A stretch of DNA of 64,000 nt. Source: Blepharisma stoltei ATCC 30299 (taxonomy: Eukaryota; Protista; Ciliophora). Every line of letters begins with the position of its first letter. The first letter of the stretch is position 1. A program made the position numbers and the translations under genes. The stretch is from the NCBI GenBank assembly GCA_965603825.1, contig CBFDEM010000002.1, forward strand, positions 124,001 to 188,000, read 5' to 3'. Positions 6,673-10,360 of this stretch are shown in pieces. A model generated the notes under the pieces. It did not search any database. It had not been told where the DNA came from and saw only the letters and a program-made list of their open reading frames with translations.

Positions 6673-7953
6673 ATGGGAGCAGATTTAATTTTCTTAGTAT
6701 GACTTGGGATTTCAGGCCTAATTTATATACCTACAGGGATTTTACTATTATGATGGTCAAATAAAAAGCCAATAAGAAACCGCTCTCCATTTCTAGTATC
6801 AATTATTCACTGAAGCAATTTTTTAGAGACTTGTTTATTTTTAGTTACCCTTTATCTGTATTTTCATGGAGATCATCATAGTTTTAAGCTTGAAATTGCA
6901 TTTCAAATTTCTCAAACCTTCCTGCACTGCTCGTTCATAATTCCTTATATACTTAGGTGTTATCGAATATATTTTATTTTTCACTTAGATCAAGACTGAG
7001 ATGAAAAAGACAGCAATTGGAGGCAGCATTTATATAAAGCCTCACAAGCCTGGCTATTCAAAATCTACTGCATTTGTATGGCGCCTGTAATTGCTTTTTC
7101 AATGTCAATTTTTATTATTCCAGGCTTTCAAGGATATTTTCCAACTTCTTACTACGACCGAAGTGAATTTGCTGACTCTATTACAGAAATGGTATATTTA
7201 TTTGTACTTTTCATAGAAGAATTAGCATTTGTTTTATGTGTATATATGCTGAGAACGGTTAATGATGACTATAAAATGACTAAAGAAATTGCAGTTGTTT
7301 GCTTATTATGGACGATAAATGGCGTTATATCGACTTTTCCCAGTAATATTGTATGAATGATTGAAGGGACCATCAGGAATAATTTAATAATGCTTGTAAG
7401 CTCACTTTATCCAGTTTTAAGCTCTATAAGAGGAGACTCTTTTGATGACGCAATTACTTTAGAAGCTTTACAATCCCTTGACCTTGTCCTACAAAATCGA
7501 GTAACTCTTGATACTTTTGAAAAGGCGCTTATTAAAGAAATCCCAAAAATGACAAAAATCAAGGCTGCTTCAGAATATTTACAAATTTGGCTTAAATGTG
7601 AATATTATCAAAACTGCCCATCTTTTGAATTAGAATGTGAAATTATGGCATCAAGCAAAATGTTGGACCATTTCAAAGCGAATAATATTAATGTTATTCA
7701 GTTTGAAGCTTATAAAGTGCTTGCTTATCATCTTTTTCCATTATTCAAAAAAACAAAAGTGTATCAAAATTTATTGAAAAATGTGATTCATCAGCAAATT
7801 TATATAAATAGGATTTTACAGACATCATTTACATTAAAATCAGATTTGGAATACTCAATTACTAGCCAAAGCTTTGACTTGATTACGAACTCAAACTCCC
7901 TCTATTTCCAGTCTCCATCTCTTTTATCTCAAAATCAGTCAGGAGTGTTTTAA
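6673..7953 (+). CDS. Seven-transmembrane protein fused to a C-terminal RGS-like domain
   Basis: Single frame from ATG 6673 through several TGA codons; seven hydrophobic segments; IRNRSPFL, LRCYRIYFIF, DDYKMTKEI; RGS-like LDLVLQN..TFEKAL..SEYLQIW..EAYKVLAYHLFPLFKKTKVY. Confidence 0.65.
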
Positions 7954-8051
7954 AAATATACTTACACGATTTTTATTAAAATTAAATTATTTATAAAAAT
8001 TAAATTTTTAATTAATTAATATACCAAATACTTGCTATTTTAAGGAAGAAA

Positions 8052-8993
8052 ATGGGATGCTGCTCAGGCAGGGTATCTTTTACGTAGCTGCAAAAGCATA
8101 TGAATGAGCCTAGCTTAATGATGATTAAAGAAGGCCAAGAAATTGTTGATAAAACTTATTTTTCAAATGCTTCTAGTAATTATATGAGTATCAGAAGTAA
8201 TCATTACAGCAAACAATTCAATGTAGCTTCAATAGAGAGCAAACATTTGAACCAAGAATTAGAGTAAAATCTATCTAGAGAGCTCAGCTTAGCTTTATCA
8301 AATATGAATTTAGAAAAAATAGAAGAAGTTTTCGAATCCAGCACAAGAATAACGATAGATGCCATTTTTCATTCCTGAGCGGAAAACCCAAAAACGATAG
8401 GAGAGCTAGCTATACATCAATTCGGGATTTTTGTTACAGAAAAAGGTTTAGCTCATGAGCCATTATTTATTGAATCAATCAAAAAAACGGAAATCGTTGA
8501 TAAGCTACTTGAATATGCCAAAAGTCAAGAAAGGGATAAATATGAAGCAGCTGTTTTAGCTTTATGTTCCTTATTGGAAAATCAAGCTTTTTCTGAAATT
8601 TTAATAAAGAAAAATGCATTAGCAATATTCATCAAGCATTTGAATGACGAAAAAGAATGGCTTAGAGGGACTGCTGCTTTATGCTGTAGAAACTTATATG
8701 TAGCTAGGCCAAGAATGCAGCAGGAATTTATTGATGGAAAAGGAAGTGAGCAGCTGTTGAAGCTTCTTAGATCAGAAAATAGCATAACTGTTTTTGAAAC
8801 AATTTTGAATCTTTTAGACTTAATATTGGATGATAAAGACAGAATCCAAATAAATATAAAAGAAAAATTACAAGATTTATGTATTATAGATGAGCTGGAT
8901 AGGATAATAATGGTAAATTGTATGCAGGAGACAAGTATTTATGACCAAGATACAATAAATGAAGCTGCTAAGTTTAAAATTTTATTTAATTAA
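8052..8993 (+). CDS. Dually acylated armadillo-repeat protein resembling apicomplexan ARO (introns 8073-8087, 8264-8278, probably 8913-8927)
   Basis: MGCCSGR N-terminus; two stop-containing 15-nt introns; HSWAENPKTIGELA; AALCCRNLYV; ARM-like helices. Confidence 0.75.
8073..8087 (+). other. 15-nt intron
   Basis: GTATCTTTTACGTAG; in-frame TAG; A at position 10. Confidence 0.9.
8264..8278 (+). other. 15-nt intron
   Basis: GTAAAATCTATCTAG; removes an in-frame TAA; A at position 10. Confidence 0.9.
8913..8927 (+). other. Probable 15-nt intron (in frame, no stop)
   Basis: GTAAATTGTATGCAG fits the consensus. Confidence 0.65.
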
Positions 8994-9067
8994 TATTTTT
9001 ATAAAAAAATCTAAAATAGGCAAGCATCATAATGAATATAATTTTTAATTGATTTAAATTCGCCAAT

Positions 9068-10360
9068 CTATATTGCTCCTAAAGCTCGATAATCGACCAT
9101 AGGCTGCGCTCTTGATATAAGCTGATCCACATTAAACCCTGACTGATAACTAATATTTTTTACTGTCGGAGAAATATTTCTTAACGCTCTTGGTGGACTT
9201 TTTGCCTTTAATTGCTTAATTTTTGGGGTTATTTTTTTGACCTCTTTTGTAGCTCTACCCAGCGCTGAGCTTGGTCTCCAATTATTCGAAACAGACCTAT
9301 AATGCTTCTTATTGAGATAAATTTGGGTATAGCTCAAATTAAGCTGCGCAGGTGACGCCGATCTATTCAGCCCACTAAAAGAAGTCTCTGAATAATTCAC
9401 CCTTGGGCTGATCTGAGGAGTAAACGTGCACCCTTCAATTTCTCTATCATCCTGTCTCTTTTTTTCTAGCTCAATTTTTTCTTTTTTATATTTCATCCAA
9501 AATTTCCCTCTTTCTAATACATCCATATCAAGCAAATCTGGGGGTTCTTCGTGCTCAAAGACCTTTGGCCTTGCTTTTACAGCTTGTCTGAGCTCTTCTA
9601 AAGATAGCGCGCTCACTTCGTGAGGCTTTTTAAGTGGTTTTTGGGTGTCGATTGAGCCTCTTGAGGTGGGAACTGTGGTGGCTCTTGCTGGGGAGCTTAA
9701 ATTGTAAGAGTGCTGGGATTTTGCGAGAGATTTTGGGGAGGTGTTGCCTGTTGGGAATTGAAAAATTTTTGGGGAAAAAGCTTGCTTTGGGGAGGCTTCA
9801 TTAGAATTTATTGCTTTTTCGAGCTCTTTTAAAGAAATTTCAGTCTGCTTGGGGACACTTTTAGAAGTACTTGGGGCTTCTGGCAAAGAGTTTAAAGTTT
9901 TTGGTTCAGAGTCTATATTTAGATTCTTTTTAGAGAATCTTGAGCTAGACAAAACCTCTTGGATTCTTGCCAAACCATTTTCTCTAAAGGATTTTTGCTC
10001 TTCATCACTTGCAAGTTTTGCGCTAATTTCAACAATTTTTCTTGATACACTATTAATTTGTGGAACTGGCCTCAAATCTTTTAATTCCTCAGCTTGATAC
10101 TTCAATTTCAACGCTGTCAATCGGGCTTGAGATTCATGATGTTTCCTCATCAGAATTTCTTCAATTTTATACTCAAGTTTCTGAGGTTTTGCTTTCGGTC
10201 TGATTTGCTGTGTATACAAAAGGACATCACTATTAGTCTTCCTTACTGCTGAGTCTGACATAAGCCTATCAAAAACATTGCTCCTGGGATGATGCGCAGT
10301 TGGTGAATAGAGAAACTGTGACGAATGATTTAGCTTGTCATAAATGTGAAAATCATTCAT
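9068..10360 (-). CDS. Hypothetical basic, Ser/Pro-rich protein (VFDRL and CTFTPQI motifs seen in protist cytoskeletal proteins)
   Basis: 430-aa open frame with AT-rich flanks. Confidence 0.7.
   Translation of the reverse strand: MNDFHIYDKLNHSSQFLYSPTAHHPRSNVFDRLMSDSAVRKTNSDVLLYTQQIRPKAKPQKLEYKIEEILMRKHHESQARLTALKLKYQAEELKDLRPVPQINSVSRKIVEISAKLASDEEQKSFRENGLARIQEVLSSSRFSKKNLNIDSEPKTLNSLPEAPSTSKSVPKQTEISLKELEKAINSNEASPKQAFSPKIFQFPTGNTSPKSLAKSQHSYNLSSPARATTVPTSRGSIDTQKPLKKPHEVSALSLEELRQAVKARPKVFEHEEPPDLLDMDVLERGKFWMKYKKEKIELEKKRQDDREIEGCTFTPQISPRVNYSETSFSGLNRSASPAQLNLSYTQIYLNKKHYRSVSNNWRPSSALGRATKEVKKITPKIKQLKAKSPPRALRNISPTVKNISYQSGFNVDQLISRAQPMVDYRALGAI

What the first reader, a model, noticed from the sequence alone, without database searches (positions are those of the whole stretch)
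8052..8993. Ciliate homologue of the apicomplexan rhoptry-anchoring protein ARO
Seen after splicing: MGCCSGR (myristoylation plus palmitoylation), HSWAENPKTIGELA, KYEAAVLAL, AALCCRNLYV, FETILNLLDLIL. From recall, Plasmodium/Toxoplasma ARO has MGNxCCAGR, HPWAADPKTIGAL, VHAAVVAL, AQTCRNIFV and LEAIYHLEDFIL in the same order. Known: ARO positions rhoptries apically. Inference: an ancestral alveolate module may dock ciliate extrusomes, paralleling the shared Nd exocytosis proteins. The gene is hidden in the ORF track by introns and a TGA.
Basis: partly seen in the sequence, partly recalled or inferred. Interest (0 to 1): 0.8.

Follow-up and report, generated by a model that had tools for sequence, protein, structure and literature searches.

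The report
Ciliate relative of rhoptry protein ARO
This expressed Blepharisma gene encodes a lipid-anchored armadillo-repeat protein that is a true relative of ARO, which positions the invasion organelles of malaria and Toxoplasma parasites, so the ARO family is older than parasitism and is expanded in this ciliate, though its function there is untested.

Summary
Window 8052-8993 (+) is a four-exon gene with three 15-nt introns and one in-frame TGA read as Trp. It encodes 298 aa, identical to an unnamed Blepharisma stoltei database protein (P0001). Assembled RNA contigs lack introns 1 and 2.

Homology to ARO is real:
- The best solved-structure sequence hit is PfARO (5EWP), E 4.9e-12, against 0.005 for the next ARM protein.
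- The HSWAENPKTIG motif aligns with ARO's motif.
- An AlphaFold model superposes on 5EWP end to end (Z 26.4, next 20.2).
- An ARO proxy searched against this genome hits only this gene family.

It is not "the" orthologue. The genome holds about ten ARO-like genes in four subfamilies. The paralogue on contig 27 is closer to ARO than the window gene. Named relatives come from Chromera, gregarines, squirmids and Perkinsus, so the family spans Alveolata.

I found no paper reporting ARO in ciliates; a 2026 paper reaches only Chromera. No MyoF-type (WD40-tailed) myosin was found here. The extrusome-docking role therefore rests on homology alone.

Verdict: new members of a known family, moderately interesting and testable.

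The parts
8052..8072 (+). Exon 1: start codon and MGCCSGR. Gly2 fits the N-myristoylation pattern; Cys3 and Cys4 are candidate palmitoylation sites.
   Evidence: Translation. The same N-terminus occurs in paralogues P0002, C29, P0081, P0209 and P0213. ARO-family proteins carry MGxxCCxGR.
8073..8087 (+). Intron 1, 15 nt, GT..AG, with an in-frame TAG.
   Evidence: The 15 nt are left out of an RNA contig of run X4. An intron sits at the same position in paralogues C27 and C29 and in metagenomic locus L018.
8088..8263 (+). Exon 2: a linker of roughly 60 residues with moderate model confidence.
   Evidence: Translation; block pLDDT 59-81 over residues 11-60; no Pfam match.
8264..8278 (+). Intron 2, 15 nt, GT..AG, with an in-frame TAA.
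   Evidence: The 15 nt are left out of RNA contigs of runs X2, X3 and X4. The position is shared with C27 and C29.
8279..8912 (+). Exon 3: the end of the linker, the family signature motif and most of the armadillo-repeat domain.
   Evidence: Translations; alignment to PfARO 5EWP; helical repeat model with pLDDT above 90.
8370..8411 (+). Signature motif HSWAENPKTIGELA. The Trp is encoded by TGA at 8376-8378.
   Evidence: W and P of this motif are invariant in 45 family members. The motif occurs in 80 of 95 hits of 225-420 aa. The TGA is kept in the RNA contigs. UGA means Trp in B. stoltei (PMC9942806).
8913..8927 (+). Intron 3, 15 nt, GT..AG, in frame and without a stop. If retained it adds 5 residues.
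   Evidence: It is absent from database protein P0001, and no paralogue has residues there. RNA contigs of two runs end exactly at 8913, which would fit a mix of spliced and unspliced forms. Splicing itself was not directly seen.
8928..8993 (+). Exon 4: the last armadillo helix and the TAA stop at 8991-8993.
   Evidence: Translation. The exons sum to 894 nt, or 298 codons, matching P0001 at 100% over residues 1-298.

Best explanation
The gene encodes a 298-aa armadillo-repeats-only protein of the ARO family. Shown here: it is transcribed and spliced; it has the ARO layout (MGCC N-terminus, linker, HxWAxxPxT cap motif, then a helical armadillo-repeat domain running to the C-terminus); and ARO is its closest characterised relative by sequence and by predicted structure. 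Inferred from the motif and from what is established for PfARO and TgARO: Gly2 is N-myristoylated, and Cys3/Cys4 are palmitoylated by a membrane-resident DHHC enzyme. That would fix the protein on the cytosolic face of one membrane compartment, where the repeat superhelix serves as a docking surface for a motor or tether. Inferred from homology only: the compartment is a regulated secretory organelle, in Blepharisma the cortical extrusomes (pigment granules or mucocysts), and the protein helps bring or hold them at the cortex. My odds: ARO-family membership about 0.9; lipid-anchored membrane adaptor about 0.8; a role in extrusome positioning about 0.3.
For: - Sequence: an exon piece hits PfARO 5EWP at E 4.9e-12, next hit 0.005. 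The family profile gives one 92-bit stretch on 5EWP, against about 20 bits per stretch on designed ARM proteins.
- Structure: AlphaFold model pLDDT 89. Foldseek puts 5EWP first (E 2.7e-10, TM 0.85 by target). VIA-align gives Z 26.4, rmsd 2.4 A, 232 of 241 residues, next Z 20.2.
- Reverse search: an ARO proxy (P0028, 275 bits to 5EWP) and the Chromera protein P0022 hit only this gene family in the genome.
- Tree: Blepharisma-type rows form one side and myzozoan rows the other of a 99/96 branch.
- N-terminus: MGCC followed by x-G/S-R is shared across subfamilies and with ARO relatives.
- Subfamily B replaces the acylation motif with an HVA22/TB2-like membrane hairpin. This suggests membrane anchoring is the conserved requirement.
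- Expression: RNA contigs lack introns 1 and 2.
Against: - There is no localisation, acylation or phenotype data for any ciliate member.
- The genome has about ten paralogues, whereas apicomplexans have one ARO (PMC13432881), so functions have probably diverged. The window gene is not the paralogue closest to ARO.
- No WD40-tailed MyoF-type myosin was found. AIP and ACbeta could not be searched.
- An MGCC motif alone does not specify the target membrane.
- The AlphaFold model used an alignment that contained ARO relatives, so the structural match is not fully independent of the sequence match.
Confidence: 0.6

Rival explanations
1. It is an ARO-family, lipid-anchored adaptor, but on a membrane unrelated to extrusomes (plasma membrane, alveolar sacs, contractile vacuole, ciliary base or endosomes). 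On this view the rhoptry role of apicomplexan ARO is a later specialisation of a general organelle-tagging scaffold.
For: About ten paralogues in four subfamilies, with two kinds of membrane anchor, suggest several destinations. No MyoF-type myosin was found. The 2026 CpARO paper argues that ancestral AROs had broader functions.
Against: The only characterised members all sit on rhoptries. Other rhoptry-discharge factors (Nd proteins, CRMPs) are reported to be conserved in ciliates, which have organelles evolutionarily related to rhoptries (PMC11343613).
Confidence: 0.33
2. It is a generic armadillo protein (Vac8-like or importin-alpha-like) whose resemblance to ARO is convergent or due only to the repeat fold.
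For: Many ARM proteins reach Z 18-20 against the model. Profile searches pick up importin-alpha, SPAG6/PF16 and designed ARM proteins. Vac8 is also N-terminally acylated (background knowledge).
Against: ARO stands well clear of all other ARM proteins by sequence and by structure. The non-repeat cap motif HxWAxxPxT is shared with ARO relatives, although 8 of 33 longer hits also carry it. Protein size and end-to-end alignment match ARO (model residues 57-298 to chain 33-274). Vac8 does not appear among the hits of the window protein.
Confidence: 0.04
3. It is a SIL1/Fes1-type Hsp70 nucleotide-exchange factor, as the automatic UniRef name of P0001 says.
For: UniRef names P0001 'Nucleotide exchange factor SIL1' and the Chromera relative 'Fes1 domain-containing'.
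Against: No Fes1 or SIL1 Pfam match appears for P0001, P0002, P0028 or P0022 even at E 0.1. The N-terminus is an acylation motif, not the signal peptide expected of ER-lumenal SIL1 (background knowledge). The best solved relative is ARO.
Confidence: 0.01

Closest known systems
PfARO / TgARO / CpARO (armadillo repeats only protein of Apicomplexa; PDB 5EWP)
   Same: Length of about 270-300 aa. N-terminal MG..CC dual-acylation motif followed by x-G-R. The HxWAxxPKT[IV]G motif before the first repeat. An armadillo-only domain that superposes end to end (Z 26.4). 22-23% identity to 5EWP, and 29% to a close ARO relative.
   Different: Apicomplexans have a single copy; Blepharisma has about ten. Cys residues follow Gly2 directly (MGCC) instead of MGxxCC. 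The linker is about 20 residues longer. No MyoF-type myosin was found in this genome. Localisation and function are unknown.
Chromera velia ARO paralogues (two reported, PMC13432881)
   Same: ARO relatives in a free-living alveolate, showing that the family predates parasitism. P0022 hits the window gene at 75 bits and 32% identity.
   Different: Chromera proteins group inside the myzozoan clade with apicomplexan ARO. The Blepharisma proteins lie on the other side of a 99/96 branch.
Blepharisma stoltei paralogues: contig 27 (P0002), contig 29, and subfamilies B, C and D
   Same: P0002 is 65% identical, with the same MGCCSGR start. Contigs 27 and 29 share both 5' intron positions with the window gene.
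   Different: P0002 and C29 are less diverged from ARO (91 and 78 bits, against 51 for the window gene). Subfamily B carries an HVA22/TB2-like hairpin instead of MGCC. Subfamily D protein P0213 has a 400-aa N-terminal extension.
Vac8 (fungal vacuolar armadillo protein)
   Same: An N-terminally myristoylated and palmitoylated armadillo protein that tethers an organelle (background knowledge). It is a functional analogy.
   Different: Vac8 is about 500-580 aa with roughly twice as many repeats. It gives no significant sequence hit from the window protein. True ARO relatives score E 1e-6 to 1e-8 against Vac8, compared with 1e-71 to 1e-84 against ARO.
Nd9 (Paramecium / Toxoplasma exocytosis protein with armadillo repeats)
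   Same: An armadillo-containing factor of the shared alveolate extrusome/rhoptry system (PMC13739732).
   Different: Nd9 is a large protein with PH and MOG1-like domains that acts at the exocytosis site in a GTPase complex. It has no acylated N-terminus. Its relationship to this gene was not tested and is not suggested by any search here.

Membership tests
ARO (armadillo repeats only) family | The closest characterised relative by sequence is ARO rather than another ARM protein. | tested here: met
   5EWP at E 4.9e-12, next hit 0.005. A single 92-bit stretch with the family profile.
ARO (armadillo repeats only) family | N-terminal Gly2 with nearby Cys-Cys for myristoylation and palmitoylation. 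| tested here: met
   The MGCCSGR sequence is present. ARO relatives have MGNNCCGGR or MGNACCFGR. Actual acylation is not testable with these tools.
ARO (armadillo repeats only) family | A small protein (about 270-300 aa) made only of a linker plus an armadillo superhelix that superposes on the ARO crystal structure. | tested here: met
   Model pLDDT 89. 5EWP at Z 26.4, rmsd 2.4 A, 232 of 241 residues. Foldseek rank 1.
ARO (armadillo repeats only) family | The conserved HPWAxxPKT[IV]G motif ahead of repeat 1. | tested here: met
   HSWAENPKTIG aligns with ARO's motif. W and P are invariant in 45 members.
ARO (armadillo repeats only) family | Reciprocal best hit, meaning one-to-one orthology. 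| tested here: not met
   The ARO proxy P0028 ranks C27 (91 bits), C29 (78) and C2:343441 (57) above the window gene (51). All nine hits are members of this family, so the relation is co-orthology at family level.
ARO (armadillo repeats only) family | A single-copy gene, as in apicomplexans. | tested here: not met
   Ten loci at E 3e-6 or better in the genome.
ARO (armadillo repeats only) family | Location on the cytosolic face of rhoptry-type secretory organelles and a requirement for their positioning. | not testable with these tools
   This needs tagging and knock-down in a ciliate.
ARO (armadillo repeats only) family | Partner MyoF, a myosin with a WD40 tail. | tested here: not met
   Four myosin loci were found. 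Their tails carry IQ motifs, an RCC1-like domain or no Pfam domain, and none has WD40. The genome search gives lower bounds only.
ARO (armadillo repeats only) family | Partners AIP and adenylate cyclase beta. | not tested
Vac8 | About 500-580 aa with about 12 armadillo repeats and best similarity to Vac8. | tested here: not met
   The protein is 298 aa, and no Vac8 hit appears at E 10 or better.
SIL1 / Fes1 nucleotide-exchange factors | A Fes1/SIL1 domain match, and a signal peptide for SIL1. | tested here: not met
   No such Pfam hit at E 0.1 or better. The N-terminus is MGCCSGR.

The most novel reading that the evidence does not exclude
The ARO scaffold was already present in the last common ancestor of ciliates and myzozoans as a membrane-anchored adaptor for cortical secretory organelles. 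In ciliates it diversified into at least four subfamilies with interchangeable anchors (dual acylation or an HVA22-like hairpin), each tagging a different organelle class. Subfamily A, which includes this gene, keeps the ancestral extrusome-positioning role. That would add a positioning step to the shared Nd/CRMP exocytosis machinery of rhoptries and extrusomes.
Probability: 0.25. Interest if true: 0.75.

Novelty: new member of a known kind. Interest (0 to 1): 0.55.

Why it matters
ARO is essential for rhoptry positioning and host-cell invasion in Toxoplasma and Plasmodium. It has been treated as apicomplexan; the furthest relatives I found reported, in 2026, are from Chromera.

A clear ARO family in a ciliate, with named members also in Perkinsus and squirmids, moves its origin back to the base of Alveolata. 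It also gives free-living, non-pathogenic cells in which the family's basic cell biology can be studied: which membrane it marks, which motor or tether it recruits, and how the acyl anchor selects an organelle.

It adds a candidate for the positioning step of extrusome biology. The proteins already known to be shared between rhoptries and extrusomes act at docking and fusion.

The expansion to about ten genes, and the swap of the anchor in one subfamily, are new facts about the family. Practically, the UniRef name 'SIL1' for this protein looks wrong.

Tried and rejected
- Word-index searches with family alignments A2 and A3 saturated on unnamed, mostly transcriptome-derived sequences. They returned no named ciliate or apicomplexan proteins. 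I therefore could not establish whether Tetrahymena, Paramecium, Stentor or Oxytricha have members.
- Three cluster look-ups gave only a few taxon names.
- Contigs of metagenomic relatives were inspected. Only L018 could be placed, and only as heterotrich-like: it has an MGCC exon followed by a 15-nt intron at the same position. An open-frame comparison under different stop-codon sets was uninformative.
- The protein atlas gave an apicomplexan ARM cluster as first hit for both P0001 and P0122. I treat this as a lead only.
- MyoF: no WD40 tail in any of the four myosin loci. One Pfam call failed because a stretch I submitted contained stops.
- The J Cell Sci 2016 ARO structure paper is not held, so published functional residues could not be checked.
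- Earlier notes of this scan had nothing on this gene.
- Rejected readings: Vac8- or importin-like generic ARM protein; SIL1/Fes1 exchange factor; unexpressed pseudogene (spliced RNA contigs).
Exon pieces were searched by reference. All full-length steps used database record P0001, which one search shows matches the window's exons at 100% over residues 1-298. In scripts, TGA codons in paralogue pieces were written as X.

Full report
**What is in the sequence**

Window 8052-8993 (+) reads ATG GGA TGC TGC TCA GGC AGG (MGCCSGR), followed by a 15-nt GT..AG stretch with an in-frame TAG (8073-8087). Next come a 176-nt exon, a second 15-nt GT..AG stretch with an in-frame TAA (8264-8278), and an open frame to the TAA at 8991-8993. 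That frame is interrupted only by TGA at 8376-8378. The standard-code ORF list shows only fragments, so the gene is indeed hidden from it.

**Source genome**

A search with the 204-aa piece 8379-8990 returned a 298-aa 'unnamed protein product' of Blepharisma stoltei (P0001). The own-genome search matches P0001 to the window's exons at 100% over residues 1-298.

The genome has 41.46 Mb in 64 contigs, which fits the published B. stoltei MAC assembly. That paper reports predominantly 15- and 16-bp introns and UGA reassigned to tryptophan (PMC9942806).

No paralogue has residues there.

**Expression**

Contigs assembled from four public runs of one study lie on the gene and lack exactly the 15 nt at 8073-8087 (one run) and at 8264-8278 (three runs). 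They keep the TGA, so the gene is transcribed and spliced as modelled.

Two contigs end exactly at 8913. This is what an assembler would do if spliced and unspliced forms of intron 3 coexist, but intron 3 splicing was not seen directly.

The TGA falls on the Trp of the HxW motif, a column invariant in 45 family members. This supports reading it as Trp.

**A note on method**

Exon pieces were searched by reference. Every full-length step used database record P0001.

**Homology to ARO**

- The 204-aa piece hits PDB 5EWP at E 4.9e-12 over chain residues 53-213. The entry title calls it ARO from Plasmodium falciparum.
- The next hits are designed ARM proteins at 0.005 and importin-alpha at 0.1. 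Vac8 does not appear.
The recalled motifs were therefore essentially right.
- A profile of the closest relatives gives one continuous 92-bit stretch on 5EWP. Designed and natural ARM proteins score about 15-22 bits per repeat stretch.
- Pfam has no ARO family and gives only sub-threshold ARM or HEAT hits.
- An AlphaFold2 model of P0001 (no templates, pLDDT 89, pTM 0.87) has 5EWP as its best Foldseek match (E 2.7e-10, TM 0.85 by target).
- VIA-align gives Z 26.4, rmsd 2.4 A, with 232 of 241 residues aligned and model 57-298 on chain 33-274. The next chain scores Z 20.2.
- Caveat: the model's alignment contained ARO relatives, so this is not fully independent of the sequence evidence.

**Family and distribution**

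An exhaustive profile search of 1.84 billion representatives found 343 proteins at E 0.001 or better. Of the 95 listed hits of 225-420 aa, 80 carry H.WA..P..[IVLM] and 55 have Cys-Cys within the first 26 residues. Eight of the 33 hits longer than 450 aa also carry the motif, so it is not confined to small proteins.

Names could be recovered for:
- Platyproteum vivax and Digyalum oweni;
- Chromera velia;
- Lankesteria abbotti;
- Perkinsus olseni;
- further B. stoltei proteins.

P0028, P0032 and P0040 score 244-285 bits against 5EWP and served as referenced stand-ins for bona fide ARO. The window protein is 29% identical to P0028 over 198 residues, and its paralogue P0002 is 35% identical.

**Reverse search and paralogues**

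P0028 searched against the Blepharisma genome gives nine hits, all at loci of this one family. The ranking is contig 27 (91 bits), contig 29 (78), C2:343441 (57), the window gene (51), and then weaker ones. Chromera P0022 ranks contig 27, then the window gene, then contig 29. ARO's relatives in this genome are therefore this family and no generic ARM protein, but the window gene is not the closest member.

The genome holds ten loci at E 3e-6 or better. A careful maximum-likelihood tree of 54 rows separates a myzozoan clade from all Blepharisma-type rows with 99/96 support. It resolves four subfamilies (a quick 97-row tree agrees):

| Subfamily | Members | N-terminus |
|---|---|---|
| A | window gene, C27, C29, two metagenomic relatives (95/94 support) | MGCCSGR / MGCCQGR |
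| B | P0206 and relatives | sub-threshold HVA22/TB2-like membrane hairpin instead of the acylation motif |
| C | C18 = P0081 and C51 in the tree; C58 = P0209 assigned from its sequence; C56 tentative, not examined | MGCCEGR / MGCCESR (C18, C58) |
| D | C5, C37 = P0213 (640 aa) | MGCCEGR (P0213) |

The order among the subfamilies is unresolved, and the tree is unrooted. Two histories remain open: a single ancestral gene that expanded in ciliates, or several ancient paralogues of which myzozoans kept one.

The three subfamily A genes share both 5' intron positions. So does metagenomic locus L018, which points to a heterotrich origin for that relative. I could not determine whether model ciliates have members.

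**How it most likely works**

- Shown: expression, gene architecture, and homology.
- Inferred with good support: G-C-C-S-G-R fits the N-myristoylation pattern (small residue at position 5 after Gly, no Pro at position 6). The adjacent cysteines are typical palmitoylation sites. In PfARO and TgARO, N-terminal acylation anchors the protein to the rhoptry envelope (PMC13432881; PMC5746546).
- Supporting this, one subfamily has exchanged the acyl motif for a membrane hairpin, which suggests membrane attachment is the conserved requirement. The repeat domain would then be a cytosol-facing docking surface.
- Inferred from homology only: the target membrane is that of the cortical extrusomes, and the protein helps position them.
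- Against a fully conserved module: the four myosin loci have IQ, RCC1-like or domain-free tails and none has WD40, so no MyoF-type motor was found. AIP and ACbeta could not be searched.
- With about ten paralogues, different members probably mark different membranes.

**What is known**

I searched the held literature eight times and read the relevant passages. No paper I found reports an ARO homologue in a ciliate.

The most recent treatment (Virulence 2026, PMC13432881) states that apicomplexans have a single ARO, that Chromera has two, and that ARO therefore predates parasitism.

The B. stoltei protein is unnamed at NCBI. UniRef carries the automatic name 'Nucleotide exchange factor SIL1', which no domain search supports. 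Orthology databases could not be consulted, so prior listing there cannot be excluded.

**Verdict**

The gene is a new, expressed member of the ARO family, one of an expanded ciliate set. The extrusome-docking function is a reasonable but untested hypothesis, at about 0.3. I rate the interest as moderate. The finding extends a well-studied invasion factor to the base of the alveolates and is directly testable in harmless organisms, but it is a family extension rather than a new kind of system.

Noticed in passing
window 8913-8927: A third 15-nt GT..AG intron lies in frame and has no stop codon. Retaining it would add five residues (VNCMQ). RNA contigs of two runs stop exactly at its first base, which may reflect a mix of spliced and retained forms.
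   Followed up: partly
G000:C2:343414-343989 (locus L005/L011; protein P0206), outside the window: An ARO-like armadillo domain with the HPWA motif is fused to an N-terminal hydrophobic hairpin resembling TB2/DP1/HVA22 (REEP-like; sub-threshold Pfam hits of 19.6-26.5 bits) instead of the MGCC acylation motif. Metagenomic relatives P0094, P0103 and P0211 have the same layout.
   Followed up: partly
G000:C37:165180-165746 (protein P0213, 640 aa): A subfamily D ARO-like protein starts with MGCCEGR and has a roughly 400-residue acidic, lysine-rich extension with no Pfam domain ahead of the TWAEAPTTVG motif and the repeats.
   Followed up: no
G000:C9:38550-43000 (locus L024): A myosin with IQ motifs and a C-terminal RCC1-like beta-propeller tail (Pfam WD40_RLD at 244 bits). 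It is one of only four myosin loci detected in this genome.
   Followed up: partly
database record P0001 (UniRef name): The automatic name 'Nucleotide exchange factor SIL1', and 'Fes1 domain-containing' for the Chromera relative P0022, are not supported by any Pfam match. They look like mis-annotations spread from the armadillo-type fold.
   Followed up: yes
L027:5241-5963 and L028:1526-2248: In an unidentified gene-dense eukaryotic metagenome contig, the ARO-like gene P0153 is followed about 170 bp downstream by a second small (240 aa) gene with a faint Arm hit. This may be a tandem pair.
   Followed up: no
window 7953-8052 and 8993-9068: The intergenic spacers on either side of the gene are only about 98 and 75 bp. 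RNA contigs of the neighbouring genes end or start within them, which illustrates the very short untranslated regions of this genome.
   Followed up: no
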